Part shown: positions 10,236 to 59,572 of the stretch, in pieces
How the letters are laid out: each line of letters opens with the position of its first letter
How positions within the stretch are numbered: position 1 is the stretch's first letter
Virus record (IMG/VR): IMGVR_UViG_3300044957_000763
Coordinates: 310,001-374,000 of that record
Length of the DNA stretch: 64,000 nucleotides
Strand: one strand, 5' to 3'
Program-made: the position numbers and the translations under genes
Notes under the pieces: generated by a model
What the model saw: the letters and a program-made list of their open reading frames with translations, nothing else
What the model was told of the DNA's origin: nothing
Databases searched by the model: none

Positions 10236-10339
10236 ATGCTATACTCTGTTTGAAATCATTTCGCGGCCCCGGAAACCAGCTTCGCTGGCTGAAGAATCTG
10301 AGCGGCCCCGGAAATCGCGGCGCAGGAGTAAAACGAATC

Positions 10340-10819
10340 ATGGGATTAGACATGTATCTCTCAAAGCGTACCTATGTCAAGAACTGGAGTCACATGAAAC
10401 CAGAAGAGCGACATGAGGTCAGTGTAACTCGTAACGGTTCGACCGTTACTGCTATCAAGCCCGAACGCGTTTCGTACATCGTCGAAGAGGTGGCGTACTG
10501 GCGCAAGGCAAATGCCATTCATGACTGGTTTGTCAAGAACTGTCAGGATGGTGTCGATGAGTGCCAGGAGTCATATGTTTCACGTGAACAGCTTCAGGAA
10601 TTGCTTGACGTTGTCAACGCGATTCTCGCTGCGCCGGCGGGTGAAGAGCGTGACCGTCTGGCCGCTGAGACCCTACCACCTGTGGCTGGTTTCTTCTTCG
10701 GAAGCACGGACATTGACGAGTACTACTACGAGGACCTTGAGTTCACGCAGGAAACTCTGACTGAGCTCTTAGCTGAACCGGACGAAGGCGAAAGATTCAT
10801 CTACCAGTCGTCCTGGTAG
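10340..10819 (+). CDS. conserved phage hypothetical protein (MGLDMYL.../YWRKANAIH type)
   Basis: Start moved to ATG 37 nt after motif 10303. Confidence 0.85.
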   Translation: MGLDMYLSKRTYVKNWSHMKPEERHEVSVTRNGSTVTAIKPERVSYIVEEVAYWRKANAIHDWFVKNCQDGVDECQESYVSREQLQELLDVVNAILAAPAGEERDRLAAETLPPVAGFFFGSTDIDEYYYEDLEFTQETLTELLAEPDEGERFIYQSSW

Positions 10820-10878
10820 AGTAAATCGAGTCCGGGGTTGCGGCCCCGGACTCACGAAATCGAAGAGAAAAAACAATC

Positions 10879-11490
10879 ATGGGAACACGTAACCTAACAA
10901 TCGTTCAATCTAACGGCGAATACAAAGTCGGTCAGTACTGCCAATGGGATGGCTACCCTGCTGGTCAGGGTGTCACTATCCTTGAAGCCCTTTGCAAGAT
11001 GGACATTCTGGCATTCAAGAAGAATGTCGACAATTTGAAGCAACTCACTGCAGATGAAGTGCAAGCATACTGGAAGAAATGCGGTGCTGATGATTCTGGG
11101 TGGGTGAGCTGGGATGTCGCTAACAAATTCAATGAGAAATACCCGCACCTACATCGCGATTTCGGTGGCAAGATTATCGAAGCGATTGCTTCGGGCGAAG
11201 TCAAGGAAGTCTATTCTGATGTGAGTTTTGCCGGCGATGGTCTCTTCTGTGAATGGGCGTATGTCATCGACTTGGACAAGAACACTTTTGAAGTGTACAC
11301 TGGTTTTAGCAAGGGACCAATGAAGCGCGGTGGCCGCTTCAATTCTCTCAAGCGTCGCAAGACGAAGAAAAACCCAGAACCGTACAACCCGGTGAGCCTG
11401 CTTGCTTCTTGGTCTTTGGACTCTCTTCCTACTCAAGAAGAATTCCTTATGCTCGAGAAGTGTGAGGATGAAGAGGAAGTGATGGCATGA
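10879..11490 (+). CDS. conserved phage hypothetical protein (MGTR...QWDGYP type)
   Basis: Motif +38; recognisable MGTR/YCQWDGYP/EWAYVIDLD pattern. Confidence 0.85.
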   Translation: MGTRNLTIVQSNGEYKVGQYCQWDGYPAGQGVTILEALCKMDILAFKKNVDNLKQLTADEVQAYWKKCGADDSGWVSWDVANKFNEKYPHLHRDFGGKIIEAIASGEVKEVYSDVSFAGDGLFCEWAYVIDLDKNTFEVYTGFSKGPMKRGGRFNSLKRRKTKKNPEPYNPVSLLASWSLDSLPTQEEFLMLEKCEDEEEVMA

Positions 11491-11810
11491 CACTCACGCA
11501 AAAAGCACAATACATCGCAAATAAGTGCGCTGACGCGTACTCATTTGACCGCTACAGTTCATGGATGTCCGTGGCTCGAGAATTGCTAAAACTGGGTTGG
11601 AAACCCATTGAGGTTGAGGCATTCATGCGCAGCAAGCACACCAGGTGGGCCGGCGACGTTTCAGGCAAGCCTTACGGTAAGTGCACCGGCAATGACGTGC
11701 TCAGATATCTAGAGAACGAGCGTAATATGCCACGCGGTATTCAAGCGGAGCTGGATGAACTGGTCGCCGGAACTTGGTCTGTTAATGACCAGCCGGTGTA
11801 TCCACTTTAG
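11487..11810 (+). CDS. hypothetical protein
   Basis: ATGA overlap with upstream gene. Confidence 0.75.
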   Translation: MTLTQKAQYIANKCADAYSFDRYSSWMSVARELLKLGWKPIEVEAFMRSKHTRWAGDVSGKPYGKCTGNDVLRYLENERNMPRGIQAELDELVAGTWSVNDQPVYPL

Positions 11811-11850
11811 CGGCCCCGGAAACCAAATTTCGGTCTCTAGATAAGACATC

Positions 11851-12012
11851 ATGAAACCAATCGAACCTACAAAGTTGCTTGTTTCAGCCCACAAGCCTGT
11901 AACTCCTAAGGAGTTCAGACCTGCAGGTTGTTACTGTGATTCAGTCAAGCGACGCTGTGGCGTCTGCAATCGTGACGCCGGCGTCAAAGCCGCGTTGAAG
12001 AGGCCGGTTTAA
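11851..12012 (+). CDS. 53-aa Cys-containing peptide
   Basis: Manual ORF filling the space between motifs 11811 and 12017; CYC...CGVC. Confidence 0.55.
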   Translation: MKPIEPTKLLVSAHKPVTPKEFRPAGCYCDSVKRRCGVCNRDAGVKAALKRPV

Positions 12013-12053
12013 CCACCGGCCCCGGAATCGAGAAGAAGGAAAAAGAAACAGAT

Positions 12054-20241: not shown

Positions 20242-20298
20242 TCCCGGCCCCGGAGCTTGATGCTCTGGGGTCTTTTCATTCGGAGACATCAAAAAACC

Positions 20299-21339
20299 AT
20301 GAGTCACTTTGTAACAGCAGTGTTCGCTCCAACGAACATCGCAACTAACCCGACCCTCCTTGAGAGGTATTTGGAAGATAAGCTCGCACCTTTTGACGAA
20401 AATCTTCAGGTGGACGAGTACGACCGCGACTGCCACTGCATCGGTAACGCCGCGAGAATAGCGGCGCGTGAAAAGGCGGATGCCGAGTTTGGGACGATTG
20501 AATCGTTGCGAGATTCGTTTTCCGCCTTGGTGCTGACCGATGGCCGTTGTGTTGGCGATATGCAGAAGCGCAACAGTGAGCTGATGTTTGCAATAAGCAT
20601 CAGTGAAGAGGAGAAATCAGAGTATCAAGCCCTGGATTCTGAACTTGATAAGCTCTGGAAGGGGCATATCACACGACGGAACGATGCTGAGAAGCAATAC
20701 TTCGATACCCACCCGATGAAGGATGCCCCAGACCCTACTTGTGGTTTCTATTCTGGTGAACGACAAGACTGGTGGGGTGAAGGTGTCAAAGAAGGAGACC
20801 GATACAGCGATGGGTCTGGTTGCGGAGCCACTGGCACATATCGTTCGACATACAACCCTGATGCCCAGTGGGACTGGTGGGTGATTGGAGGCCGATGGAA
20901 TGGCTGGCTTGCACCACCAGAAGCACAGCCTGAGAAAGACCCAGACAACTGGGAAACCTGCTGGTTGTGCAACGGCACTGGTATGCGAAATGATGACCTC
21001 GGTCAAAAAGCGCGCGAGGCCGACCCGACGTACACCTGCAATGGTTGTGGTGGCAATGGCAAGAGTGTGGTGTGGCCGAGCGAACAAAAGGATTCGGGCT
21101 ACAATGTTGTTTCTCCGAAATACATTGAGTCTCTGGGTCTGATTGGCGACCTGCCCACGCCTTATGCTTTTATTGACCTTAATGGTGAATGGCATCAGAA
21201 GGGTGATATGGGTTGGTGGGGTATGTCGAGTAACGAAAAGGACAGAGATGCGTGGGTCGAAGAGTGGCGCACTGCTCTTGCCGACATCAGCGATGGTGTG
21301 GATGGTTTTCGTGTCGTCGTTGTCGATATGCACATCTAA
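20299..21339 (+). CDS. conserved phage protein (YNP..WDWW.IGGRW type) with inserted DnaJ-like CxxCxGxG zinc finger
   Basis: MSHF start, YNPDAQWDWWVIGGRW, CWLCNGTG, CNGCGGNG, GWWG, VDMHI end. Confidence 0.8.
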   Translation: MSHFVTAVFAPTNIATNPTLLERYLEDKLAPFDENLQVDEYDRDCHCIGNAARIAAREKADAEFGTIESLRDSFSALVLTDGRCVGDMQKRNSELMFAISISEEEKSEYQALDSELDKLWKGHITRRNDAEKQYFDTHPMKDAPDPTCGFYSGERQDWWGEGVKEGDRYSDGSGCGATGTYRSTYNPDAQWDWWVIGGRWNGWLAPPEAQPEKDPDNWETCWLCNGTGMRNDDLGQKAREADPTYTCNGCGGNGKSVVWPSEQKDSGYNVVSPKYIESLGLIGDLPTPYAFIDLNGEWHQKGDMGWWGMSSNEKDRDAWVEEWRTALADISDGVDGFRVVVVDMHI

Positions 21340-31108: not shown

Positions 31109-31186
31109 TCAGTCATGCCCGGAACTTAGGTTCCGGGCATTTTCACTCCGGCCCCGGAATCAAAAAAACAATCAAAACAAACAATC

Positions 31187-32848
31187 ATGGGATTAACAAC
31201 CACAGCGCCTAGCGCACATGACTTTCAGATGCACCCCGAACTACTTCGTTCGGTTATCAAGAAGCAAGCTGGTACCTTGGACAAGGCACTGCTTGAAGGC
31301 ATCATGAACTCCATCGACGCCGGCGCAAAGCGCATCGACGTCACGATTGAACCGTTGAGTGTGACCATCAACGACGACGGTCGTGGTTTCCGCGATGCCG
31401 ATGAAGTTCGAGACTTTTTCGCCACCTTTGGCACCCCGCATGAAGAAGGCGACGCCACCTATGGTCGGTTCCGTATGGGTCGTGGTCAAATGTTCGCATT
31501 TGGCATCAACTCATGGCGAACTGGCACGTTCAAGATGGACGTTGACATCAACAAGCGTCTTGGATTTGAACTGGAAACCGAACTACCCATGCAGGTTGGT
31601 TGCAGTATCGAAATCAAGCTGTATGACGTCTTGTCGTTGGCAGATGTCCACAACACGACTCGTGCTATTACGAAGATGGTCAAGTACACACCTGTCCCCG
31701 TTTTCATCAACGGCGAAAGGGCGAACGTTGACATTGACCCCAAGAAATTCCCGCAAACCATTGACGAAGCGTACATCAACACGCAATCGGCGCAATATGG
31801 TGGGTTGGATGTTTACAATCTTGGTGTTCTTGTCTGCACCATACCTGCATGGAAGTTCGGTGTGTCTGGTGTTGTCATTAGTCGTCAACAACTTGATGTC
31901 AACTTCGCACGAAACGACATTCTTTCGACGTGCAAAGTGTGGCGCAAAATCAAGGCAATTGTTGACGCATCTGGAAAGAGAGAAGTCACACGACGTGCAA
32001 CACTGACCGAAGATGAACAAGAGAACATCATTAATCGGTTGGTCACGAAAGGTCTTAATGTTTTCGAAGCAGACGGTATTCGGTTCTTGCGTGACGTAAC
32101 AGGTAAGGCTTGGACACCTGCACAAGTGCGACGCGCAAGGTTTGAAGCCTATAGTGTTGCACCGCGTGGTAACACCTACGGCGATAAGCTGATACAAACT
32201 GGCAAAGCTATCGTGTTTGACGAAGCGTGTATTGCACTATTCGAGTGTGAACCGCACGAAGTATTCAAGAAGTTCCCGTTCAAGGGTATGCCGTCGTTTG
32301 CGACTCTTGATAGTCTGACTACTGGCATTTCTGCGACTGGTACAATCTTGCCTAAAAAGCAATGGAAACCAACCGAAAAGGCTTGGAATGCTGTGGCACG
32401 TCGAATGCAAGGCTATTTGACACAAAGCAGATGGGATTCTACGCAACGCCGATACGTCTATGACTACAAGTCAAGACGCATTGACATTGGCACAAGTGAT
32501 GTTGCTAACGGTTGGACTGACGGTGCGACGTACATCGCTATTGGACGTGAATATCTGAAAAGGATTCCAATGTTCCAAAGTGGTGTACCGTCTATTCAGG
32601 CATTTACCAAGTTGGCACTTCTGCTTATTCATGAAGCCTGTCATAACACAGATTCGAGAGATAACGTACACTCTCCAGACTTCTATCGTGAGTATCACGA
32701 CACCACCATGAAACTGGTTGGTGCAATGGTGCAGGACGCTATTGCGTACATGACACCCGCACGATACAAGCATCTGTCAGGCAAGGACGTGGATTTGGAT
32801 GAAGCGGTGGAATTGCCTACTGAATTAGGCGATGAACTAGACGAGTAG
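31187..32848 (+). CDS. GHKL (Hsp90/MutL-like) ATPase with C-terminal HEXXH motif
   Basis: EGIMNSIDAGA, DDGRG, GRFRMGRG; LIHEACH...H; motif +38. Confidence 0.85.
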   Translation: MGLTTTAPSAHDFQMHPELLRSVIKKQAGTLDKALLEGIMNSIDAGAKRIDVTIEPLSVTINDDGRGFRDADEVRDFFATFGTPHEEGDATYGRFRMGRGQMFAFGINSWRTGTFKMDVDINKRLGFELETELPMQVGCSIEIKLYDVLSLADVHNTTRAITKMVKYTPVPVFINGERANVDIDPKKFPQTIDEAYINTQSAQYGGLDVYNLGVLVCTIPAWKFGVSGVVISRQQLDVNFARNDILSTCKVWRKIKAIVDASGKREVTRRATLTEDEQENIINRLVTKGLNVFEADGIRFLRDVTGKAWTPAQVRRARFEAYSVAPRGNTYGDKLIQTGKAIVFDEACIALFECEPHEVFKKFPFKGMPSFATLDSLTTGISATGTILPKKQWKPTEKAWNAVARRMQGYLTQSRWDSTQRRYVYDYKSRRIDIGTSDVANGWTDGATYIAIGREYLKRIPMFQSGVPSIQAFTKLALLLIHEACHNTDSRDNVHSPDFYREYHDTTMKLVGAMVQDAIAYMTPARYKHLSGKDVDLDEAVELPTELGDELDE

Positions 32849-37344: not shown

Positions 37345-38028
37345 ATGAGCAAACCGGCAACCGCAGTCGAACTGAGTCGAAACTCGAAGATTGGCGACGC
37401 AAGCGCAACCTACGTTTCGCAAGCGTCGTGCCCGCCCACTTGCCCTTTCCAGAATTCTGGCTGCTATGCAGAAACTGGAATGACGGGTATTCATACCCAC
37501 CGACTTAACCGCTCGGTTATAAGCGACCCCGAGGCTATCGCACAGTGCGAGGCTGAAGAGATTCGCAAGCTGACCGGTCGCTTCCCGTTGCGTTTGCACG
37601 TTGTCGGAGACTGTACAACCGACGCCTGTGCGGATATCGTTTCGCTCGCGGCCTCGGAACATCAGTCCAAGCACGGACAACCGGCATGGACGTACACTCA
37701 TGCCCACAACGTCCGACGTGAGTCGTGGCGTGACATCAGTGTACTTCGGTCGTGCGAGAACATCGAGCAGGTTCAGCAAGCCCACGAGGATGGCTTCGCC
37801 ACCGCGATGGTCGTGCCTGAATTCGAGCGTGACACCGCCTATCCGATTGCCGAGGATATTGTGGGTATTCCGTGCCCGCAACAGACCGGCAAGGTTGCGA
37901 ACTGTATGGAGTGTCGCCTGTGTATGCAGGACGTCAAACTGCACCGCTCGCGACGCACCATTCTATTCGAGGCACATGGCACCGGGCGAACTCGCCTTGT
38001 GAACGTCCTCGCCGGCCCCGGAGCTTAA
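37345..38028 (+). CDS. Cys-rich GP88-like protein, paralogue of 17259..17948
   Basis: LTGRFPLRLHVVGD identical; WTYTHA; motif +37. Confidence 0.75.
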   Translation: MSKPATAVELSRNSKIGDASATYVSQASCPPTCPFQNSGCYAETGMTGIHTHRLNRSVISDPEAIAQCEAEEIRKLTGRFPLRLHVVGDCTTDACADIVSLAASEHQSKHGQPAWTYTHAHNVRRESWRDISVLRSCENIEQVQQAHEDGFATAMVVPEFERDTAYPIAEDIVGIPCPQQTGKVANCMECRLCMQDVKLHRSRRTILFEAHGTGRTRLVNVLAGPGA

Positions 38029-38049
38029 CTCCGGGGCGCAACAAACATC

Positions 38050-38250
38050 ATGGCAAATCCGAAAACATTTCAATGCCTAACCTTGGCGGCGGCCATCGAC
38101 CTGTACGCTAAGACTGGAGTCAAGGCAAACAGGTCGTATACTCCGACCAATATGCTCAGAACTGCCAGCCAATTGACTGGCAAGACGTTCAAACGAGGTC
38201 AATATCAAGCGGCCTCGGATGCGCTCAGGGAGTGCGCACAAACATCATGA
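38050..38250 (+). CDS. hypothetical protein
   Basis: Motif +37. Confidence 0.75.
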   Translation: MANPKTFQCLTLAAAIDLYAKTGVKANRSYTPTNMLRTASQLTGKTFKRGQYQAASDALRECAQTS

Positions 38251-38648: not shown

Positions 38649-38690
38649 CGAACCGGCCCCGGAGCTTCGGCTCCGGGGCTTTTTTCATTC

Positions 38691-39275
38691 ATGTCAAGTT
38701 TCGAAGTCTATCGAGAACTCAAAGGCGTCGAGCCGCACCGGCTTACCAGAAAAGAGTATGCGGTCTTGGTCCGCGCCGCGTCGCAACGAGTCATCAAGCG
38801 ATACATCAACGACCGAAATGAGGCCCGAGCCGCCTTTAATGCTTGGAACGAAGCCAACCCAGGCCCAGACCCAAAGAAATTTGGATACAGCGAAATCAAT
38901 GGCTGGCCCAGCGCTGCCGCACAAGACCGGTACGTCGATGTCTATGAGCCGCATCGTGGACTATGGGGGCAGCAATATCAGGCACTCTATCAACTGGGCC
39001 AATATGTCACTCAGCTCAAGAAGAACATCATCTTGTCTCGAATGATTGAAAATGGTCGATATGAAGCGGCAAGCCGAGAGAACAACTTCTTTGTGAACTT
39101 TGGAGGCGTGAACAATCCACTCCTTAACCATGGCCAGGACGTATTCCGAGCCCTCTATGCTAAACTTGACATCCCAGAACAAGTTCTGGCCGAATGGCCT
39201 GAGGGTGTCGAACAAGTCCGCAAAGAAATCGCGGCCCGGGAACGATGGAATCAACTAAATCCTGAATACACATGA
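38691..39275 (+). CDS. hypothetical protein
   Basis: Motif +37. Confidence 0.75.
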   Translation: MSSFEVYRELKGVEPHRLTRKEYAVLVRAASQRVIKRYINDRNEARAAFNAWNEANPGPDPKKFGYSEINGWPSAAAQDRYVDVYEPHRGLWGQQYQALYQLGQYVTQLKKNIILSRMIENGRYEAASRENNFFVNFGGVNNPLLNHGQDVFRALYAKLDIPEQVLAEWPEGVEQVRKEIAARERWNQLNPEYT

Positions 39276-40798: not shown

Positions 40799-40840
40799 AC
40801 CACCGGCCCCGGAGTTCAACTCCGGGGCTCAACAAACATC

Positions 40841-41131
40841 ATGAGTAATCAGGGCATACTCACCAAGTCCGTCAGCGGAATTCCATGCATCTGCATAGAC
40901 AACACATCTCCAGAATGGGAGAAGGCATGGGCTGCTCTCTACGAGAAGTACGAGAATCATATCTCCGTTGGGTGTGAAGTCTGGCAGTACATGGGAACAT
41001 GGCTGACTGAAGGCACGACGTGGGTTCACCAGTTCCGACACAGGGACTATCACGGTGAGCGCAAGTACGTCGACATCACGCCCACCGACGAGTTCTTAGC
41101 GAGCATCCCAGATATTCTGGCTGCGAGCTAA
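40841..41131 (+). CDS. hypothetical protein (WQYMG...HQFRHR type)
   Basis: Motif +37. Confidence 0.75.
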   Translation: MSNQGILTKSVSGIPCICIDNTSPEWEKAWAALYEKYENHISVGCEVWQYMGTWLTEGTTWVHQFRHRDYHGERKYVDITPTDEFLASIPDILAAS

Positions 41132-42197: not shown

Positions 42198-42288
42198 AGT
42201 ACACTACGTCGGATGACCACGGCCCCGGAGCTACGGCTCCGGGGCTTTCTTACTTTGTGCCACAAAGAGTGGTATAATTCGAGAACGA

Positions 42289-42468
42289 ATGTACGTAATC
42301 GCACAACCCAACAACGAATTCGTCACGGATGGCGCGGGGAAAATCCAGCGCTTCAAGAACCCAAGGTCTGCAAGAGACTTTTTGCGCGATATTGGAATTC
42401 GCAAGCCTGACAAGGAAGGAATCCGAATCATTCCGCAAGCCGAAGCGGTCCCGGAACCAGCGAAGTAA
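42289..42468 (+). CDS. 59-aa hypothetical protein
   Basis: Manual ORF MYVIAQPNNEF...; TGGTATAAT upstream. Confidence 0.55.
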   Translation: MYVIAQPNNEFVTDGAGKIQRFKNPRSARDFLRDIGIRKPDKEGIRIIPQAEAVPEPAK

Positions 42469-45207: not shown

Positions 45208-45420
45208 ATGAGCAGGTTCAAAGAAGGCGACAAGGCACTCTTCGGTTCGTTGAAGGTGCCTTGTACCGTAAAGTGCGTGAATACCTCCAGTATCGGAATT
45301 GAGGGTCTAACGCATCGAATCACTGTGCAGTTTGATGAAAGTCGGCGCACTTCGACCAAATGGGAATGGGAACTAACGCCGGCCCCGGAATCCAACATCG
45401 AACAGGAGCAAACATCGTGA
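45208..45420 (+). CDS. hypothetical protein
   Basis: Motif +38. Confidence 0.7.
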   Translation: MSRFKEGDKALFGSLKVPCTVKCVNTSSIGIEGLTHRITVQFDESRRTSTKWEWELTPAPESNIEQEQTS

Positions 45421-45692
45421 GCAACAGTACAGAACTCATCAGTCTCGCACAACAGATTGCACGACAAGACCGCGAAACCTGGAGGCGCGAGAACAATGGC
45501 AAGCAGATAGTGCTTCCAGATTTCGTTTATCACGACTTCGAGCAAAAGCGGTATATTCATCTGCTCGAAGAAATCGTCAAGGGCGAGTATGACGAAAGCA
45601 ACTTACTGTTCTTCAAACGATTGAACGACAAACGGTTGTCAGAACTCCGGGCGGCCCCGGAAACCAACACCAAACAGGAGCAAATAGCGTGA
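45417..45692 (+). CDS. hypothetical protein, tandem duplicate of 45689..45967
   Basis: GTG at motif +37; LAQQIARQDRE.WRRE. Confidence 0.75.
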   Translation: MSNSTELISLAQQIARQDRETWRRENNGKQIVLPDFVYHDFEQKRYIHLLEEIVKGEYDESNLLFFKRLNDKRLSELRAAPETNTKQEQIA

Positions 45693-45967
45693 GCAACATT
45701 TCGCAAATCATCAATCTCGCACAACAGATTGCGCGACAAGACCGCGAAATCTGGAGGCGCGAGCATCATGTCAAGGGGGCTGTGTTACCAGATTCAGCCT
45801 ATGACAAATACGAGAACTTGCGATATATTCATCTGCTCGAAGAAACCATCAAGAACGAGCGTATGCTTAGGAATCAGGATACACTAAAAATCCTACTAGG
45901 CTTGAAGCAATTGAACGACAATCGTTTACAGGCCCAAACCACCGGCCCCGGAAACCAACATTTATAG
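45689..45967 (+). CDS. hypothetical protein, tandem duplicate of 45417..45692
   Basis: GTG at motif +37. Confidence 0.75.
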   Translation: MSNISQIINLAQQIARQDREIWRREHHVKGAVLPDSAYDKYENLRYIHLLEETIKNERMLRNQDTLKILLGLKQLNDNRLQAQTTGPGNQHL

Positions 45968-45979
45968 GAATTCAACATC

Positions 45980-46423
45980 GTGAAGAAACACACTTTCACC
46001 AGCAAGACATTCTGTGGCACTCCATGGTCCTCTCCCGAAGAAAAAGCCAAGTTCGCGAACGACTTAGCCGCTCTCGTGCGGTCTGGTTTCAATCGGAATA
46101 GGTTCCACAAGGGACTCTACAATCGACTGAGCACGACGTTTGGCCATATTGCCCACTACAATATCGAGGGCTTTTATGGCGAGTGGTTCGAGACTCCGGC
46201 AAGACAGCTTGCATGGGTGCAGAACGCACTTAGGTATCCGTGCTACGGTGACCCTGGGTTTACTTACTCAGACGCTGAGCGCCAGTTCCAGAATTGGCTG
46301 CAGTCCGACGAAGGCCAAGAGCTTATCGCCGGAATCGAGCAGTTAGCAAGGGACGCCGCGATTGCCTCAGCTCGGGCGCAGAAGGAGTGCGCCGAAGCTA
46401 CGCTGGCATCATACGGTGTGTAA
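45980..46423 (+). CDS. hypothetical protein (FGHIAHYN..GFY type)
   Basis: GTG at motif +37. Confidence 0.8.
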   Translation: MKKHTFTSKTFCGTPWSSPEEKAKFANDLAALVRSGFNRNRFHKGLYNRLSTTFGHIAHYNIEGFYGEWFETPARQLAWVQNALRYPCYGDPGFTYSDAERQFQNWLQSDEGQELIAGIEQLARDAAIASARAQKECAEATLASYGV

Positions 46424-52132: not shown

Positions 52133-52139
52133 ACTTACA

Positions 52140-53698: not shown

Positions 53699-53704
53699 CC
53701 CATC

Positions 53705-53875: not shown

Positions 53876-53914
53876 GCGGCCCCGGAAAACAAAAACCCAG
53901 AAAACAAAAACATC

Positions 53915-54265: not shown

Positions 54266-54308
54266 CCTACCGGCCCCGGAGTTCCGTGCTCCGGGGCTTT
54301 TCTCATTC

Positions 54309-54503
54309 ATGCCAAGTTGCGAACGCTGCCAAAAGCCAACAAACGTCACAATTATGTCCATGTTCAATACCCAAACCATTTGCATGGACTGCAAGGACTC
54401 GGAGAAGAAACATCCGAAGTACAAAGAGGCACAGCAAGCCGAACTTGAAGCCGTAAAAGCCAATAACTACAACTTCCAAGGAATCGGATTTCCGGGCAAC
54501 TGA
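54309..54503 (+). CDS. small zinc-finger phage protein (C.RC...MSMFNT..IC..C)
   Basis: Motif +38. Confidence 0.75.
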   Translation: MPSCERCQKPTNVTIMSMFNTQTICMDCKDSEKKHPKYKEAQQAELEAVKANNYNFQGIGFPGN

Positions 54504-54544
54504 ACCCGGCCCCGGAAGCCCAAATCAGGGCAACATTACACATC

Positions 54545-54697
54545 ATGAGCAAGAAGCAAAAAGCACAAAAGCCCGCCTACACCCCGGTGCCCTTCACACG
54601 GGCACACTCCAAGCCACATCGACTTGAGGAGAACAGTCGTGCCCGACGAAAGCGCGAAGAACGCGATGCCAAGAACGGCAACTGGAGACAGGATTGA
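54545..54697 (+). CDS. 50-aa basic peptide
   Basis: Manual ORF at motif +38; TTGA overlap with next gene. Confidence 0.6.
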   Translation: MSKKQKAQKPAYTPVPFTRAHSKPHRLEENSRARRKREERDAKNGNWRQD

Positions 54698-55065
54698 TAA
54701 CTGAGTTCAAAGGTGAAAGGGGACAATTCTCAGTATGCCATGATGGTGAAACGCGGAGTCTTCAGGCTATCGTGTATGCATTGGAACCACCGGATGAGTT
54801 CGGAGTCAAACACAAGGAACCAATTGACTGGCGATTAAGTGAGAAAAATCATTCACCGACCGGCCTTGAATGGGGATATGGTGGCTCCGGACCAAGCCAA
54901 CTTGCATGGTGTCTGCTTCGTGAATGTGGACTGACAAAACCCCAGACAGAAGCACTCTATATGCGATTCAAAGCAGATGTAATAGCTAACCTGCCGCGAG
55001 AAGGCTTTACCCTGACAAAGAAACAAGTGATGGACTGGGTCAAGAAAAGCGGCCCCGGAAAGTAA
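54694..55065 (+). CDS. DUF6166-like protein
   Basis: HSPTGLEWGYGGSGPSQLA. Confidence 0.75.
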   Translation: MITEFKGERGQFSVCHDGETRSLQAIVYALEPPDEFGVKHKEPIDWRLSEKNHSPTGLEWGYGGSGPSQLAWCLLRECGLTKPQTEALYMRFKADVIANLPREGFTLTKKQVMDWVKKSGPGK

Positions 55066-55086
55066 ACCGTGGCATACTCATCAAGC

Positions 55087-55362
55087 ATGCCACGATACAC
55101 ACTCGACACACCAAGTCAGCACTTGCTGAACCAGAAGGATAAGGACATCACCTACTACGGTATCCTGCTGGACGGCAGGGTGCAGATTACTGGTGCCCTG
55201 TTTAATAGCAAGGCACAAGTTGTCAAGGCTATCAAAAAGCTCAACAATGCCATCGAGCAAGGCTTGCCCAAGGTAGAGGTCGAAATTCATCGCGGAATGT
55301 ACTTGTGGGACTTGCAAGAGCACAATCAAGGCATACCCGTAAAAGGTGTGGAAGTGTCCTGA
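55087..55362 (+). CDS. hypothetical protein
   Basis: Motif +37. Confidence 0.65.
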   Translation: MPRYTLDTPSQHLLNQKDKDITYYGILLDGRVQITGALFNSKAQVVKAIKKLNNAIEQGLPKVEVEIHRGMYLWDLQEHNQGIPVKGVEVS

Positions 55363-55430
55363 CTGTGGACACTCTGTCACCAAATGAAACAATCGGTCCC
55401 GGAGCTTAGGCTCCGGGACTTTTTTGCTTT

Positions 55431-55730
55431 ATGAGAAACATCCTCACGAGAAAAGTCTTGTTTCCAGTATGGTTGCTGTGCTTACTGGTCATGGCTGATA
55501 CAGCATGGACTATTTGGGTTGTCCATCGCGAACTAGCTATCGAAGCCAATCCACTGATGGCACACCTGGTCAATTACAATGTGCCAGCTTTTGTTGCCAT
55601 CAAAACTAGTGTTGTGCTTGCGTTTGCCGTAATGCTCGAACTCATACCCGACCAACGACGCAAGAACAGATTCGCACATACAGCATTTGGATTGTTTGTT
55701 GTGCTATACTGTATCTGGAGTATTTGTTAA
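55431..55730 (+). CDS. DUF5658-like membrane protein
   Basis: D...T......EANPLM......F...K; motif +37. Confidence 0.7.
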   Translation: MRNILTRKVLFPVWLLCLLVMADTAWTIWVVHRELAIEANPLMAHLVNYNVPAFVAIKTSVVLAFAVMLELIPDQRRKNRFAHTAFGLFVVLYCIWSIC

Positions 55731-55774
55731 AAATTCGGCCCCGGAATCCCAAAACAACACAAACCCAAAAGAGT

Positions 55775-55984
55775 ATGAAGAAAATTCAACGCATCGCCAC
55801 TACCCTTGGTATTCCGGCGAATGAAATCACCAAAGCCGAGCGTAAAGCTATTCAAAAAGCCAACTCGGCCACTGAAGTTTGTCGAATACTTGGGGTCGAA
55901 GTCGCCGGTAATGTACAATATGTGCAAGCCGCTATGAAGCGACCGAAGAAAAAGAAAACGCAGGTGTATGCGTATGCCGCGTAA
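55775..55984 (+). CDS. small basic protein
   Basis: Motif +39. Confidence 0.65.
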   Translation: MKKIQRIATTLGIPANEITKAERKAIQKANSATEVCRILGVEVAGNVQYVQAAMKRPKKKKTQVYAYAA

Positions 55985-56170
55985 AGGAGGACACAAATGA
56001 CACTACAAAGCTCAGGATGTATGTTCATTCTTGGAATGATATTCTGTGGAATTTTCTGGGGTGGACAAGGCGTGTTTTGGTGGGTGATTGCAAGCATCAT
56101 CATAACCATTTTGGAATCCGATAAAATCTAAGCGACCCCGGAACCACCAAGACCACTGAATCAACAAATC

Positions 56171-56545
56171 ATGTGGAAAACACAGCAACAAGCCGACACC
56201 TTCAACCGATGCCTTGATGGCGCAAAGCAGACAGGATTCAACGGTTGTATCACTTATGCCAACAAAGCAGACGCTGACAAGGCTTGCGCCACGCTCGTGC
56301 CGACGATTGATGAGGCGTATGAACTAACAGCCCATCAGGGCAAAGTCTATGCCGAAGTCAACCAAGAGTACATGAGCGAACCACGTTTGCGAGTTACAGG
56401 GTTTCTCGAAGCTATCATCGACACCAACCCGGTGAGTGCCGAGTTTGAAGCCGAGGGCGAGGATGGTGAGCAGTATCAGATACACTTTGAGTCTGGCAAA
56501 TGGGTGCTACTTCAACGCCCTTACAACTTCACAGAGGTAGCCTAA
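56171..56545 (+). CDS. hypothetical protein
   Basis: Variant motif +38. Confidence 0.75.
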   Translation: MWKTQQQADTFNRCLDGAKQTGFNGCITYANKADADKACATLVPTIDEAYELTAHQGKVYAEVNQEYMSEPRLRVTGFLEAIIDTNPVSAEFEAEGEDGEQYQIHFESGKWVLLQRPYNFTEVA

Positions 56546-56586
56546 GATGCGGTCCCGGAACTTCGGTTCCGGGACTTTTTTTATTC

Positions 56587-56751
56587 ATGCCAACAGCAAA
56601 AACACTCAGGGAACTTGGCGAAATCATCACCAAAAACTTTTCGCAGGAAAGCATTCGCGAAGGGTACCAAATCGACCCCGCCGACTTGGAAGAAGTTGGT
56701 CGCCAAGCATTACTCTTTGGCGACATTCAACAAGACGGGACACTCAATTAG
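56587..56751 (+). CDS. hypothetical protein
   Basis: Motif +37. Confidence 0.65.
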   Translation: MPTAKTLRELGEIITKNFSQESIREGYQIDPADLEEVGRQALLFGDIQQDGTLN

Positions 56752-56794
56752 GCGGTCCCGGAACCCGGACTAATTCGGACTCCCAACAAGCATC

Positions 56795-57175
56795 ATGAAG
56801 ACATGGCTAAGTGACGAGGACGCCAAGGCAATCTGCCGACATCGTGCGAAGTCAAACGATTACATTCGACGTCAATTGTCCTCGGGCACCCAAGTACCAC
56901 GAGCAACTTGGATGCAATGGGCACACGAATACGATGCCGTCCGTACAATCCTTCAGACACTTGCTAGAGTCTGTGACGGCGCAAAGTCGCACGATGGATG
57001 CGGGTTTAACAAACACGATTCAAGGAAAGGGAAGCAACTTGCTTATCAATCCGAACTTACGAACGAGGAATTTTGGATTGGAGTCAGAATCGTCCGCAAG
57101 TATCACCAACAAATAAACCCGGCACTAATGGCGTGGATACCCCGGTCCCGGAAGTCCAATAGTCCGGGTTCCTAA
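56795..57175 (+). CDS. hypothetical protein (CDGA...DG.GFNK.D...KYH.Q type)
   Basis: Motif +42. Confidence 0.75.
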   Translation: MKTWLSDEDAKAICRHRAKSNDYIRRQLSSGTQVPRATWMQWAHEYDAVRTILQTLARVCDGAKSHDGCGFNKHDSRKGKQLAYQSELTNEEFWIGVRIVRKYHQQINPALMAWIPRSRKSNSPGS

Positions 57176-57180
57176 CTCAC

Positions 57181-57498
57181 ATGAGTGAAACAGAAAACTC
57201 AGCCGACCGCTTCATCAAGTGGTTGGACTCAATCGCCAATTCAACGCTCGGCAAAATCGGGGTGTCAAAAGGATTCCATATCTGGCACTCAGGTGGTGGT
57301 TGCCATCACTTCCGAAAGGACGCCGAGAACGGGTGCTACGTTCTTGTGTGCCACGAGGGGGAGATTCCTGAAACCGACCCAGGTATTTGGATGGTGGGAA
57401 CCTACGACGCCGAAGGCGAGGAAATCCACGTTCTTGACCTCGAATACACGCTTGAGGAAGCGTTGGACTCGGCAAGCAAGTTGCTTGCCGAAGTCTGA
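57181..57498 (+). CDS. hypothetical protein (HSGGGC)
   Basis: Motif +38. Confidence 0.75.
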   Translation: MSETENSADRFIKWLDSIANSTLGKIGVSKGFHIWHSGGGCHHFRKDAENGCYVLVCHEGEIPETDPGIWMVGTYDAEGEEIHVLDLEYTLEEALDSASKLLAEV

Positions 57499-57560
57499 AA
57501 ACCACCGGTCCCGGAACCCCGAAAAGCGGGGTTCCCTAGCAATGTCCTAAGGAAAGGAAA

Positions 57561-57869
57561 ATGAGTCGACACACAACCAACACCAGCAAGTTCGAAATCG
57601 TACTCGGAGTAGACCGACCGCTCAATCATGTGTTCGCGTCGGTTTTCGACCGAAAAGGCGAAGATGCCAAGGGTTTTGACCCGTTCTCGTGGTTCGCTCC
57701 GACTTCCGCCGGCGTCGAAGATGCTATCAAGGCGGTTGAAGGATTTACCAAGTCAAAGTTGCCCGAAAGCATCAGGGAGGCACTGCTGGCTGACCTGATG
57801 GCTATGCAGGAAGGTCAAAGCATCAACTATTCCAAGACCCACGGTGCTGCCCTGTTCGGGTTCGCATAA
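57561..57869 (+). CDS. hypothetical protein (G.DRPL..F type)
   Basis: AGGAAAGG SD. Confidence 0.75.
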   Translation: MSRHTTNTSKFEIVLGVDRPLNHVFASVFDRKGEDAKGFDPFSWFAPTSAGVEDAIKAVEGFTKSKLPESIREALLADLMAMQEGQSINYSKTHGAALFGFA

Positions 57870-57936
57870 CCCTCCGGTCCCGGAACCCCGATAACGGGGT
57901 TCCTCTACTTCATCACCACGAAAGGTGAAACGAATC

Positions 57937-58224
57937 ATGGAAGATAACAAGACAGGTTTTCAACTATGCCTGGAGCGTGCCGCCGTCAAGGTAGCATGGG
58001 GCATTCTCGTCACTACTATGGCACTCCCCACTGCATGGAAGTGGGCGGTCGCCATCGACCCTGATGGCATCTTGGGCGTCACGATTGCGCTTGGCTTCCT
58101 TGGAAGCGTTGCGCTAACGCCACTGATGCTTGGATGCGGGTTCGCATCCGATGACTTGCGCAAGGCACGACGTATATGGCGTGCTTCACGACCAAGCCGG
58201 TCCCGGAACCACCGAATCGGCTAA
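57937..58224 (+). CDS. small membrane protein
   Basis: Two hydrophobic segments. Confidence 0.65.
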   Translation: MEDNKTGFQLCLERAAVKVAWGILVTTMALPTAWKWAVAIDPDGILGVTIALGFLGSVALTPLMLGCGFASDDLRKARRIWRASRPSRSRNHRIG

Positions 58225-58277
58225 ACCACTTATCATCGCCAAGCAAGAAAGCAAAGCGATAAAGGAGCAACAACACA

Positions 58278-58475
58278 ATGATGAAGGTTCTTAAATTTGA
58301 CGCAAAGACTGGTGTAGCCACCATCGAACTTCAACTCGACATGAAAGGTCGCCCGTCGACCTCTGGCAAGACCACCGTTCACTTCAGCACGAACGGAAAC
58401 CAGCGCGTTGATGAAATCCAGGTGGGCGGTCGCCCGTTGGTCATCGGCATCAACGCCTACACTCCCAAGGGGTAA
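58278..58475 (+). CDS. conserved small protein (PS.SGKT...ST.GN type)
   Basis: AAGGAG SD. Confidence 0.75.
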   Translation: MMKVLKFDAKTGVATIELQLDMKGRPSTSGKTTVHFSTNGNQRVDEIQVGGRPLVIGINAYTPKG

Positions 58476-58549
58476 CACCTATATCGCCGGTCCCGGAACC
58501 CGCCTAGTGCGGGTTCCCCTACAATGTCCCAAGGGACAGGAGCAACACG

Positions 58550-58789
58550 ATGCCAAAGCAAGACACAAGTATCGTCAATGCCGTTGCACAATACACGCAA
58601 CGCCAGACTCGTCAGCAGGTCAAAAGGTTGCTGATTCGTGCCGATAAACTCAACGGCGACCGGCTTGCCCGCATCCCTGGTGCCGGGGATGAGTTACGCA
58701 AGCTCTTGGACAAAGTCGCAACCTTAGACCAAAAGGCTGCCCATGATTTTGCCGTGAGCATCGGGTGGGGCGACCGAATCCCCGCATAA
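58550..58789 (+). CDS. hypothetical protein
   Basis: AGGAG SD in the extended leader. Confidence 0.7.
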   Translation: MPKQDTSIVNAVAQYTQRQTRQQVKRLLIRADKLNGDRLARIPGAGDELRKLLDKVATLDQKAAHDFAVSIGWGDRIPA

Positions 58790-58854
58790 ATCGCCGGTCC
58801 CGGAACCCCGCTAGGCGGGGTTCCCTAGCAATGTCCCAAGGGACAGGAGGCACC

Positions 58855-59070
58855 ATGAAGGTAGTTGATATTAGCCTGACCGCAACGTCGGAAGGCACGC
58901 TTGTCAATCTCCGCAACGCTCTCGGCCAACGCGTTGCGAAAACCCACTTGCCAGGATGCGGGGACTTTAACGTCCTCGGTTGCGATGTCATGGTCAAGAT
59001 GCCGGCAAACCTCGTCCGCTCGCTTCTGAAAGGGAAGGGTGCATACATCACGACCAACAAGACCGCCTAA
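58855..59070 (+). CDS. hypothetical protein
   Basis: GGAGG SD; in-frame upstream ATG at 58831. Confidence 0.7.
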   Translation: MKVVDISLTATSEGTLVNLRNALGQRVAKTHLPGCGDFNVLGCDVMVKMPANLVRSLLKGKGAYITTNKTA

Positions 59071-59137
59071 TCGCCGGTCCCGGAACCCCGCCTAGCGGGG
59101 TTCCCTACCAATGTCCCAAGGGACAGGAGGAACAAGC

Positions 59138-59242
59138 ATGAAACTCGCCATCTCCCTCGTCGTAGTCTACGGACTGGTCTTTCACACGACCATGACCGTT
59201 GTCATCGTTGTCGCGTTAGCGGTAATCAAGGCGATGAAATAA
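59138..59242 (+). CDS. 34-aa hydrophobic peptide
   Basis: GGAGG SD; in-frame upstream ATG at 59111. Confidence 0.55.
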   Translation: MKLAISLVVVYGLVFHTTMTVVIVVALAVIKAMK

Positions 59243-59572
59243 CGCGGCCCCGGAACTCAACCGCGTCCGCCTACCTAAAACATGGCAAGCAAGGTGCAAT
59301 CATGAAGTATTGAACGGAACGAAATTTGGAACCGACAAGCCGGGGGTGGTGCCCCGGCTCCACAAGCCATGCCGGCCCCGGACATCGAAGATGCCGGCGG
59401 TGATTAACTCCCGCCACAAACTCTTTGGTCGCCGCGGCCTGGCTGGCGACCAGCTTTGCGTTTCTCTAAGGATAGGGGGTGGCATCAAGGTTTAGGTACC
59501 ATATCTGAAATAGTAACGTCCGTATACGGGATGTTATTTTTTCTCTGTGAGCCACATAGGGGGGTGGACCTA

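What the first reader, a model, noticed from the sequence alone, without database searches (positions are those of the whole stretch)
10264..59382. 49-kb gene array in which a GC decamer sits a fixed 37-38 nt upstream of most start codons
Seen: ~85 copies of CGG(C/T)CCCGGA (a few with 1-2 mismatches), all on +, confined to 10.26-59.4 kb. From the first C, ~61 copies have the ORF start at +37/+38 (e.g. 10841>10879, 12017>12054, 17950>17988, 22542>22580, 23415>23453, 31149>31187, 40804>40841, 44464>44501, 50311>50348, 55394>55431) and ~9 more at +36/39/40. Many of these are the first possible start of the ORF, so this is not only start-picking bias. The ~27 nt between motif and start vary in sequence but not in length, and usually have no SD and no TANNNT. 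They typically end in (A/T)TC-ATG. Most copies with a more distant start (14984, 19143, 20245, 57506, 58198, 58488) have an SD-like AGGA/GGAG at or after about +36. Inference: this fits a promoter with a TSS near +37, giving leaderless mRNA when the ATG is there and leadered mRNA otherwise. That would be a -10-less promoter class read by an element-encoded sigma factor, RNAP or activator, repeated in front of about 85 units. Alternative: it is the joint of a gene-capture cassette system. I do not recognise this motif from described systems. Mycobacteriophage start-associated sequences are the closest analogy but sit at the RBS position.
Basis: partly seen in the sequence, partly recalled or inferred. 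Interest (0 to 1): 0.93.

Follow-up and report, generated by a model that had tools for sequence, protein, structure and literature searches.

The report
Repeated promoter-terminator units in huge phage
A 49-kb block of a 479-kb phage genome carries about 85 copies of one GC-rich 10-base signal, each 37-38 bases before the start codon of an unrelated small gene; it is most likely a phage-specific promoter that often doubles as the stem of the previous gene's terminator and makes mRNAs with no leader.

Summary
CGG(C/T)CCCGGA occurs 82 times (0.18 expected). Eighty copies are on + between 10264 and 59382. Fifty-eight have an ORF start at +37/+38 (3.7% for random positions), and nine more lie at +36 to +42.

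The window is part of a 478,840-bp IMG/VR phage contig. The 73 motif-coupled genes form 71 unrelated families, mostly ORFans.

The pairing is supported by compensatory changes, and 19 hairpins carry a T-run ending 4-5 nt before the ATG.

Relatives keep the motif and its spacing, including variants such as CGGCCT(A/C/G)GGA. One distant relative has neither the motif nor the spacing and uses Shine-Dalgarno sites.

Best reading (confidence 0.6): these are composite terminator-promoter units. A phage factor, probably the divergent sigma at 6232-7089, reads the motif at about -37 to -28, and transcription starts at or next to the ATG (C-1/A+1), giving leaderless mRNA. No 5'-end data exist.

The closest known analogue is the PeSL cassette of T4-like phages. 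This is a new variant: no host-type -35/-10, no Shine-Dalgarno, fixed leaderless geometry. Cassette gain and loss at the units is seen, but no integrase.

The parts
10264..59382 (+). Array of 80 exact (about 87 with one-mismatch intergenic copies) CGG(C/T)CCCGGA units. Each precedes a gene on the + strand. The C variant dominates from 10.2 to 41.2 kb and the T variant from 41.5 to 59.1 kb.
6232..7089 (+). Divergent sigma70-family sigma factor (regions 2, 3 and 4). Its start may be the GTG at 6268. Extended -10 sites TGGTATAGT and TGGTATACT lie at 6214 and 6237. It is the candidate reader of the motif.
10237..10245 (+). Host-type extended -10 (TGCTATACT) that heads the array, just upstream of the first motif. 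Similar sites are at 55702-55710 (before motif 55736) and 42270-42278.
10264..10342 (+). Tandem pair of motifs (10264 and 10303, 39 nt apart) followed by GGAG and the ATG at 10340. The pair is conserved in relatives L004 and L006.
38654..38693 (+). Archetypal hairpin + T-run unit: motif 38654-38663, 11-bp stem 38655-38680, T-run, then CATTC-ATG at 38691.
31149..31189 (+). Archetypal hairpin-less unit: motif, 28-nt A/C-rich G-free spacer without SD, ATG at 31187 (553-aa HATPase protein).
20245..20301 (+). Leadered unit: motif, hairpin, T-run, then GGAG at 20282-20285 (about +37) and ATG at 20299. The predicted transcript would begin at the SD.
42220..42291 (+). A unit used as a terminator and followed by a host-type promoter (TTACTT, 17 nt, TATAAT with TG) and an ATG at 42289. 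This copy is built exactly like a PeSL.
45380..45982 (+). Three consecutive units (45380, 45652, 45943). The motif lies inside the preceding ORF, the start is GTG at +37, and AGGAG or AGGA sits 8-9 nt upstream.
40804..40843 (+). Junction where relative L138 carries an extra 962-nt cassette flanked by two units (L138 19822 and 20784). The window has a single unit here.
38013..38250 (+). Cassette replaced by unrelated sequence in L138 between two units (window 38013/38210, L138 16962/17255). The orthologous unit shows a compensatory change: motif C to T with 3' arm G to A.
57506..59120 (+). Run of six units (57506, 57875, 58198, 58488, 58795, 59075). Five have a different hairpin (GGAACCCCG...CGGGGTTCC), and 58198 has none. 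Four of these (57506, 58488, 58795, 59075) have ATGTCC at +36 and an SD further downstream.
6874..6883 (-). Antisense exact copy inside the sigma gene. A second one is at 7309-7318 in the next gene. In relatives these sites carry one mismatch, so they are probably incidental to coding sequence.

Best explanation
The array is a hyperplastic accessory-gene region of a 479-kb phage. Almost every gene in it has its own compact regulatory unit, laid out as follows:
- the stop codon of the upstream gene;
- 0-10 nt;
- (C/G)CGG(C/T)CCCGGA(A/G);
- a 26-27 nt spacer;
- (A)TC;
- ATG.

Inferred mechanism, in order:
1. Host RNA polymerase first transcribes early genes from extended -10 promoters (TGnTAnAnT). 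These include the phage sigma gene 3 kb upstream of the array.
2. The phage sigma, or another phage factor acting with RNA polymerase, binds the GC-rich motif. If transcription starts at the start codon, the motif lies at -37/-38 to -28/-29, which is the normal place of a -35 element.
3. The G-poor, A/T-rich stretch in front of the start codon opens, and transcription begins at the A of ATG (C at -1).
4. The resulting mRNA has no leader and is translated without a Shine-Dalgarno site.

The spacer is free to carry other functions:
- In 44 of 80 units it holds the loop and 3' arm of a hairpin whose 5' arm is the motif itself.
- In about 19-20 of these a T-run follows. The unit then also terminates transcription coming from upstream, and the units are insulated from each other.
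- In the hairpin-less units read-through is possible, and about a third of them add an SD.

Because the same unit flanks unrelated genes, recombination between units adds, removes and swaps genes.

Shown: the motif, its spacing, the hairpin pairing, conservation in relatives, the presence of the sigma gene, and indels at the units. Inferred: the transcription start site, the sigma-motif pairing, and leaderless translation.
For: (1) Spacing. Fifty-eight of 80 exact copies have the start at +37/38, against 3.7% for random positions. Forty-seven of 67 are the first start of the ORF.

(2) The signal is read as nucleotides and is attached to unrelated genes.
- The 73 coupled genes form 71 families.
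- About 20 copies sit inside the upstream ORF in all three frames.

(3) Conservation in relatives.
- L138 has 26 copies, all on +, 22 of them at +37/38.
- L004, L006, L136 and L137 have the same motif.
- L007 and L141 have CGGCCT(A/C/G)GGA at +37/38.
- L140 has CGGCCCC(A/G)GA at +38/40.
- Orthologous spacers diverge and toggle between +37 and +38, while the motif stays intact.
- Distant relative L139 lacks the motif and has tightly packed genes with AGGAG.

(4) Hairpins are real.
- 97.4% of cells are paired.
- Three pairs show double changes: CG 15 / UA 9 at motif position 4, and AU 14 / GC 13 at position 11.
- 0 of 500 shuffles reach the observed values, and slid controls give 20-62% paired.
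- The 14 best-ranked + strand terminator-like sites in 36-56 kb all start at a motif.
- The T-run ends 4-5 nt before the ATG. A start site that escapes its own terminator must therefore lie within those few bases.

(5) An 11-bp GC hairpin (-20 to -26 kcal/mol) buries the motif in RNA in half of the units and leaves it free in the other half. That argues for recognition in duplex DNA.

(6) Start signature. C at -1 in 53 of 67 and a purine at +1. ATG in 62 of 67. Leaderless mRNAs prefer AUG (PMC8459731). The three adjacent GTG units carry AGGAG or AGGA.

(7) Host-type sigma70-like promoters are not enriched in the array: 13 found against 14.8 expected.

(8) The same phage places extended -10 hexamers 6-9 nt before start codons at 6232, 7108 and 62300. 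Leaderless expression is therefore plausible in this host.

(9) The sigma gene.
- Pfam Sigma70_r2.
- TIGR02937 in all 18 homologues.
- Region 4 matches SigW/SigE.
- Every listed Foldseek match (E up to 3.5e-3) is a sigma factor.
- NrdG-sigma synteny with the array 3-4 kb downstream holds in every relative.
- The region 4.2 helix is identical where the motif is identical and differs where the motif differs.

(10) PeSLs show that stem-loops between or over promoter boxes are compatible with promoter activity (PMC2839356).
Against: - There are no 5'-end or expression data.
- No -10 element is detectable. The -12 to -7 region is either a T-run or A/C-rich, which is unusual for a sigma70-family factor.
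- Ten to thirteen conserved bases is long for a -35 element.
- About 10 of 31 hairpin-less units have an SD. Part of the array could therefore be translated from read-through transcripts.
- 25 of the 44 hairpins lack a T-run, and their role is not explained.
- The sigma-motif link rests on co-occurrence and on four lineages only.
- Only contig positions 300,001-383,531 were seen, so other factors, or a phage RNA polymerase encoded elsewhere, cannot be excluded.
Confidence: 0.6

Rival explanations
1. RNA-level signal. The array is transcribed as long RNAs from a few host-type promoters. The motif acts in the RNA, either as a site for a translational activator or ribosome contact, or as a site for an endonuclease that cuts a fixed distance downstream and frees a 5'-AUG.
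For: - Host-type extended -10 promoters lie just upstream of motifs 10264 and 55736, so those copies are transcribed.
- Hairpin-less spacers are A/C-rich and unstructured, like translation enhancers.
- About a third of them have an SD.
- The conserved ATC-ATG could be a cleavage site.
Against: - In half of the units the motif is locked in a hairpin of -20 to -26 kcal/mol, and in the rest it is single-stranded. One RNA-binding factor is unlikely to read both forms.
- About 19-20 strong hairpin + T-run terminators in series would stop long transcripts.
- The hairpin and T-run fill -36 to -5, where a 30S subunit would need free RNA.
- No Rfam family matches.
- The motif is absent from flanking + strand genes of the same phage.
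Confidence: 0.12
2. Operator model. The motif is the binding site of a global phage regulator (repressor or activator, monomer on single sites and dimer on the inverted repeats). It overlaps promoters whose core elements are something else.
For: - Ten to thirteen invariant bases and the frequent inverted repeat CCCCGGA..TCCGGGG resemble an operator.
- No -10 consensus is found.
Against: - No other conserved element exists in the units that could serve as the core promoter, apart from ATC-ATG.
- T-runs follow the inverted repeats on the + strand only, as expected for RNA terminators.
- G-U pairs are tolerated (GU 3 and 4, UG 2). That fits RNA pairing, not a DNA palindrome.
- The rigid +37/38 spacing to the start still requires initiation there.
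Confidence: 0.1
3. Antitermination model. The units are mainly terminators. Expression depends on a processive antiterminator loaded at the head of the array, with the motif as its recruitment site.
For: - A host-type promoter and a conserved double motif sit at the head of the array.
- There are many strong terminators.
Against: - 36 of 80 units have no hairpin, yet their motif is perfect.
- This model does not explain the fixed distance to the ATG or the lack of SD behind terminators.
Confidence: 0.07
4. Dedicated gene-capture system. The motif is the recombination joint of cassettes that are moved by a site-specific recombinase, as in integrons.
For: - All units share one orientation.
- The genes are unrelated ORFans.
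- A clean cassette insertion and a cassette replacement between relatives have breakpoints in the units.
Against: - No integrase or recombinase was found among the array or flanking proteins scanned. The only nuclease is an HNH gene at 59633-60205.
- Half of the units lack any palindrome.
- The fixed distance to the start codon is a property of expression, not of recombination.
- Other indels do not use the units: small genes are inserted at the ATG or translationally coupled.
- Homologous recombination between 40-nt repeats is sufficient, as proposed for PeSLs (PMC2839356).
Confidence: 0.05

Closest known systems
PeSL (promoter-early stem-loop) cassettes of T4-like phages (Arbiol et al. 2010, PMC2839356; Comeau et al. 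2014, PMC4122927)
   Same: - Tens of copies of a short composite promoter + stem-loop terminator unit.
- Concentrated in hyperplastic regions.
- Placed directly after the upstream stop codon and in front of ORFans.
- The stem-loop lies between or over the promoter boxes.
- The units mark insertion, deletion and replacement breakpoints between related phages.
- Window unit 42220 is even built with a host-type promoter.
   Different: - PeSL promoters match the host sigma70 consensus (-35, -10, upstream AT-rich region) and end with an SD before the start codon.
- Here there is a GC-rich 10-13-nt element, no -10 or -35 consensus, no SD in most units, and a rigid 37-38 nt distance to the ATG.
- The conserved promoter element is itself the terminator arm.
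- The phage is unrelated to T4-like phages as far as was seen, and there are 80+ units in one block.
Middle/late promoters read by phage-encoded sigma factors (SPO1 gp28, phiEco32/7-11 gp36; PMC13401047, PMC4331800, PMC8948821)
   Same: An early, host-transcribed phage sigma70-family gene, and a phage-specific promoter sequence repeated before a temporal class of genes.
   Different: - By my own recollection (not read in the papers cited here), those promoters have a recognisable -10-position element and leadered, SD-dependent genes. Copy numbers are also far lower.
- Here no -10 element is seen and the start codon sits at the predicted start site.
Leaderless genes of Actinobacteria, Deinococcus-Thermus, Caulobacter and archaea (PMC3898074, PMC8459731)
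   Same: - Start codon at a fixed short distance from promoter elements.
- No SD.
- Strong preference for AUG.
- The host-type promoters of this phage (extended -10, 6-9 nt, ATG) look exactly like this.
   Different: In those organisms the fixed element is the -10 hexamer 6-7 nt upstream. Here the only fixed element is at the -35 position.
Mycobacteriophage start-associated sequences (SAS/ESAS, cluster K; own knowledge)
   Same: A short conserved sequence repeated upstream of many phage start codons, sometimes with an inverted repeat.
   Different: SAS lies a few bases from the start codon and contains the ribosome-binding site. This motif ends 27-28 nt upstream and has no SD character.
Integron attC cassette arrays (own knowledge)
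   Same: A one-directional array of unrelated small genes separated by a repeated, partly palindromic site.
   Different: - No integrase.
- Half of the sites lack a palindrome.
- The site is fixed relative to the downstream start codon and is not a 3' cassette end of variable length.

Membership tests
PeSL-type composite promoter-terminator cassette | Short repeated unit in intergenic regions of a hyperplastic region, upstream of ORFans | tested here: met
   80 exact copies in 49 kb. The 73 coupled genes form 71 families, mostly without Pfam hits.
PeSL-type composite promoter-terminator cassette | Stable stem-loop within or overlapping the promoter, acting as terminator or attenuator | tested here: met
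   44 of 80 units have a hairpin and 19 of these a T-run. Covariation supports the pairing. Activity was not measured.
PeSL-type composite promoter-terminator cassette | Promoter matching the host sigma70 consensus (-35, -10, upstream AT-rich region) | tested here: not met
   No TTGACA/TATAAT-like boxes in the units. Sigma70-like sites are not enriched, 13 against 14.8. Only unit 42220 has one downstream.
PeSL-type composite promoter-terminator cassette | Shine-Dalgarno and start codon at the 3' end of the unit | tested here: not met
   An accessible SD-like stretch is found in about 10 of 66 units. The start codon is fixed at +37/38.
PeSL-type composite promoter-terminator cassette | Indels and replacements between related phages break at the units | tested here: met
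   L138 against the window shows one clean cassette insertion, one replacement flanked by units, and several one-sided cases. Only one 21.6-kb comparison was made.
Sigma70-family-dependent phage promoter | The phage encodes a sigma70-family protein with regions 2 and 4 | tested here: met
   PF04542, TIGR02937 in 18 of 18 homologues, region 4 hits to SigW/SigE, and every listed Foldseek match (E up to 3.5e-3) a sigma factor.
Sigma70-family-dependent phage promoter | Conserved element at the -35 position relative to the start site | tested here: inconclusive
   The motif spans -37/-38 to -28/-29 only if the start site is the start codon. The start site is not mapped.
Sigma70-family-dependent phage promoter | Conserved -10 element | tested here: not met
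   No conserved bases at -12 to -7, which is either a T-run or A/C-rich. CGA(A/G) is enriched but scattered in position and reflects a genome-wide TCGA excess.
Sigma70-family-dependent phage promoter | Transcription from the site depends on the sigma | not testable with these tools
   Needs in vitro transcription or reporters.
Leaderless mRNA genes | Transcript 5' end coincides with the start codon | not testable with these tools
   There are no 5'-end data. The indirect argument is that terminator T-runs end 4-5 nt before the ATG.
Leaderless mRNA genes | No SD, strong AUG preference, purine at +1 and pyrimidine at -1 | tested here: met
   ATG in 62 of 67, C at -1 in 53 of 67, no accessible SD in most units. 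The literature basis is PMC8459731.
Intrinsic terminator | GC-rich hairpin followed directly by a U-run | tested here: met
   True for 19-20 units. Not true for the other hairpins.
Mycobacteriophage SAS | Conserved sequence a few bases upstream of the start codon, including the RBS | tested here: not met
   The motif ends 27-28 nt upstream.
Integron/attC gene cassettes | Adjacent integrase and structured attC at each cassette end | tested here: not met
   No integrase or recombinase among the array and flanking proteins scanned. 36 of 80 sites have no palindrome.

The most novel reading that the evidence does not exclude
A promoter class without a -10 element. A divergent phage sigma, or another phage factor, anchors RNA polymerase only through a 10-13-bp GC-rich upstream element and starts 37-38 bp downstream, whatever lies between (a terminator hairpin or A/C-rich filler). 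This would be a 'ruler' mechanism closer in logic to archaeal BRE/TATA promoters than to bacterial -35/-10 promoters, and it would make leaderless mRNAs for about 70 unrelated genes.
Probability: 0.25. Interest if true: 0.8.

Novelty: new variant of a known kind. Interest (0 to 1): 0.62.

Why it matters
If the units work as inferred, four things follow.

1. They define a new sigma/promoter pair whose specificity sits almost entirely in a -35-position element. That is of interest for how sigma70-family factors open DNA without a -10 consensus.

2. A huge phage would run a whole 49-kb accessory region on leaderless mRNAs. This says something about the translation apparatus of its uncultured host. 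An Armatimonadota MAG contig carries a relative, which is the only host clue.

3. The PeSL principle would have arisen independently outside the T4-like phages. In that principle one compact promoter-terminator unit both insulates accessory genes and serves as a recombination handle for shuffling them.

4. Practically, the motif gives exact start-codon calls for about 70 ORFans in this clade. It also offers a 40-nt orthogonal terminator-promoter part for testing in laboratory strains.

Tried and rejected
**Searches that gave nothing useful**
- Megablast of 18 kb of the array against GenBank phages: no match.
- tblastn of the sigma against phages: no match.
- The MoxR/CobS-like ATPase has only distant hits of 25-40% identity.
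- blastn of one unit finds only generic terminator hairpins in unrelated phages.
- A scan of IMG/VR for the hairpin form finds copies only inside this window, plus one stray hit.
- Profile searches for the sigma in IMG/VR and in GTDB genomes found only this contig and one Armatimonadota MAG contig.
- Rfam finds only a tRNA.

**Ideas tested and dropped**
- An ECF-type GGAAC -35 inside the motif. The distance to the ATG (30-31 nt) is 4-5 nt too short by my reckoning of ECF geometry (own knowledge).
- A SigI-like CGWA -10. This was prompted by NCBIfam SigI hits to region 2 and by PMC10575876. CGA is enriched in spacers (39 against 22.8), but its position is scattered from -29 to -6, and TCGA is over-represented throughout the array.
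- MazF-like ACA cleavage making leaderless RNA. ACA is present only in the A/C-rich class.
- Tandem gene duplication as the source of the repeats. The 73 genes form 71 families.
- The minus-strand copies as antisense promoters. In relatives they carry a mismatch and lie in conserved coding sequence.
- A link between CCGG in the motif and restriction avoidance. CCGG outside the units is near expectation.

Full report
**What the window is.** The sigma ORF and the 635-aa VWA protein match IMGVR_UViG_3300044957_000763 at 100%. That contig is 478,840 bp, and the window is its positions 300,001-364,000. A near-identical 478,786-bp contig exists in a second sample.
- No GenBank phage is close. The window has one tRNA-Gln gene.
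- The left flank (1-10 kb) carries a polynucleotide kinase, an NrdG-like radical-SAM activase and a sigma70-family gene.
- The array carries a DNA/RNA ligase, WGR proteins, a MoxR/CobS-like ATPase with a VWA partner, an HATPase protein, a methyltransferase, two DUF7227 paralogues and dozens of ORFans.
- G+C is 0.50-0.53 in the array and 0.43-0.49 in the flanks.

- CGGYCCCGGA occurs 82 times against 0.18 expected. Eighty copies are on + between 10264 and 59382.
- The distance to a start codon opening an ORF of at least 35 aa is +37 in 33 copies and +38 in 25. It is +36 to +42 in nine more. Thirteen copies have no such start. For random positions the +37/38 rate is 3.7%.
- With one-mismatch intergenic copies the +37/38 count is 62.
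- Sixty-two starts are ATG and five are GTG. Forty-seven of 67 are the first possible start of their ORF.
- The bases before the start read A-T-C (47, 49 and 53 of 67), and G is nearly absent from -11 to -2 apart from -5.
- The motif extends to (C/G) at -1 and to A/G, n, C after it.
- There is no + copy in the window flanks or in the next 19.5 kb of the genome.

**The signal is attached to unrelated genes and acts as nucleotides.**
- The 73 coupled genes fall into 71 families.
- In 46 copies the upstream stop codon ends 0-10 nt before the motif.
- In about 20 copies the motif lies inside the 3' end of the upstream ORF, in all three frames, still at +37/38 from the next start.

- In 44 of 80 copies the motif pairs with a downstream TCCGGG(G/A)C. 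Typical stems have 10-11 bp and -20 to -26 kcal/mol. Nineteen are followed by a T-run that ends 4-5 nt before the ATG.
- On 33 such units from the window and from relative L138, 97.4% of cells pair.
- Motif position 4 covaries with its partner (CG 15, UA 9, UG 2). Position 11 also covaries (AU 14, GC 13).
- No shuffle of 500 reaches the observed values, and slid controls pair at 20-62%.
- An orthologous junction shows the double change directly: window 38013 has C...G and L138 16962 has T...A.
- The 14 best-ranked + strand terminator-like sites between 36 and 56 kb all begin at a motif. Sigma70-type promoter matches there are at the chance level, 13 against 14.8.

**Relatives.** Homologues of the sigma (44-87% identity) lie in the same NrdG-sigma-small-genes synteny in every contig fetched.
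- L004, L006, L136, L137 and L138 carry the same motif on + only. L138 has 26 copies in 21.6 kb, 22 of them at +37/38.
- L007 and L141 (sigma 57-58% identical) carry CGGCCT(A/C/G)GGA at +37/38.
- L140 (sigma 46%) carries CGGCCCC(A/G)GA at +38/40. It lies inside a 1.36-Mb contig of an Armatimonadota MAG.
- The region 4.2 helix of the sigma is identical in the genomes with the same motif and differs in the others. With four lineages this is only suggestive.
- Orthologous spacers differ in sequence, in class (hairpin or not) and by one base in length, while the motif is untouched.
- L139 is a distant relative, with an anchor protein 39% identical. It has no motif at all, and its genes are tightly packed behind AGGAG. 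The system is therefore a trait of one sub-clade.

**Why DNA-level promoter with a start at the ATG is the best reading.**
1. A factor that reads the sequence in RNA would meet it buried in a very stable hairpin in half of the units and free in the rest. Duplex DNA recognition is indifferent to this.
2. About 19-20 strong terminators in series would silence downstream genes unless each unit re-initiates. A start site upstream of the hairpin would run into its own terminator. The start must therefore lie in the 4-5 nt between the T-run and the ATG, or at the ATG.
3. With the start at the A of ATG, the motif covers -37/-38 to -28/-29, which is the -35 position. The start has the usual pyrimidine at -1 and purine at +1.
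4. ATG is used in 62 of 67 units, in line with the AUG preference of leaderless mRNAs (PMC8459731). The three neighbouring GTG units carry AGGAG or AGGA.
5. The units whose start codon is further away place an SD at or just after +36. In 20245, for example, GGAG is at +37. This is expected if the RNA begins there.
6. The same phage puts host-type extended -10 hexamers 6-9 nt before start codons at 6232, 7108 and 62300. Leaderless expression is therefore already its habit with the host polymerase.
7. A sigma gene that is itself behind host-type promoters sits 3 kb upstream.

The sigma has regions 2 and 4 by Pfam and NCBIfam. Its AlphaFold model (mean pLDDT 76) matches only sigma factors, including SigD, sigma32, sigmaS, SigB and WhiG.

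**What remains weak.**
- There is no -10 element. The region is a T-run in terminator units and A/C-rich in the others.
- A SigI-like CGWA was considered and rejected.
- About a third of the hairpin-less units have an SD and may also be translated from read-through RNA.
- 25 of the 44 hairpins have no T-run.
- The sigma-motif link is circumstantial, and most of the genome was not visible.

**Cassette behaviour.** The window was compared with L138 over 21.6 kb.
- L138 has an extra 962-nt gene cassette flanked by two units where the window has one unit (40804).
- One gene is replaced by unrelated sequence between two units (window 38013/38210).
- Several small genes are inserted right at a unit's ATG, or are translationally coupled to the upstream gene without a unit of their own.
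- No integrase or recombinase is present.
- This is the pattern described for PeSLs, where homologous recombination between repeated promoter-terminator units shuffles ORFans (PMC2839356, PMC4122927).

**Comparison with known systems.** The units work like PeSLs. They fail two PeSL-defining features, a host sigma70 consensus promoter and an SD. They resemble phage-sigma promoters but lack a -10. They resemble leaderless promoters but are anchored at -35 instead of -10. I therefore file them as a new variant of a known kind, not as a member of any of these families.

**Verdict.** The cassette alternative is true only as a by-product. Interest is 0.62.

Noticed in passing
window 1-64000; also L004, L006, L007, L138, L140, L141, L143, L144: GATC is completely absent from the 64-kb window, where about 266 are expected. 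It is also absent from every fetched relative that carries the motif, while the motif-less relative L139 has 155 in 21.5 kb. TCGA is about twice over-represented. This looks like total avoidance of a GATC-specific restriction system.
   Followed up: partly
L140 / L145 (JAFDWS010000002.1, positions 284-305 kb): A syntenic relative of the NrdG-sigma-array block lies inside a 1.36-Mb contig of an Armatimonadota MAG. It has motif variants and zero GATC. It may be a host clue (integrated or co-binned huge phage) or an assembly or binning artefact.
   Followed up: partly
window 70-1600: A 78-nt (26-codon) tandem repeat occurs about 17 times. It is bracketed by three copies of a promoter-like 29-mer ending in TGCTATACT (at 1, 438 and 1655). 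It is probably a repeat protein, with weak Phage_FRD3/DUF982 hits to ORF 380-1714.
   Followed up: no
window 6874-6883 and 7309-7318, minus strand: The only two minus-strand exact copies of the motif lie antisense inside the sigma gene and the next gene. In L004 and L006 the same sites carry one mismatch, so they are probably a by-product of conserved coding sequence rather than antisense promoters.
   Followed up: yes
window 6214-6245, 7093-7101, 62285-62293: Early-type genes have extended -10 hexamers (TGGTAnAnT) only 6-9 nt before the start codon and no SD. Host-polymerase transcripts of this phage therefore also look leaderless.
   Followed up: partly
window 10264-41148 versus 41526-59084: The two motif variants are spatially separated. 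Only the C variant occurs up to 41.2 kb, and the T variant predominates after 41.5 kb. This may reflect two affinity or timing classes, or local homogenisation.
   Followed up: no
window 57506-59120: Five of six consecutive units (57506, 57875, 58488, 58795, 59075) share a different hairpin, GGAACCCCG...CGGGGTTCC. Four of them have ATGTCC at +36, in 57506 as a two-codon mini-ORF (ATG TCC TAA), before an SD-led gene. This may be a regulatory leader.
   Followed up: no
window 59633-60205, minus strand: An HNH endonuclease gene on the opposite strand sits exactly at the right-hand end of the array.
   Followed up: no
L143 11552-15847 (contig about 364.4-368.7 kb), minus strand: A 1431-aa SNF2-family helicase with a LAGLIDADG hit inside it, which may be an intein or homing-endonuclease insertion. 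It lies just beyond the window.
   Followed up: no
L139 (Ga0265327_10000075, 214-kb contig): A distant relative (anchor protein 39% identical) has no motif, normal GATC content and tightly packed SD-led genes. It is a natural contrast genome for the origin of the system.
   Followed up: partly
window 17259-17948 and 37345-38028: Two DUF7227 paralogues form one of only two paralogous pairs among the 73 motif-coupled genes. The other pair is 45417/45689.
   Followed up: no
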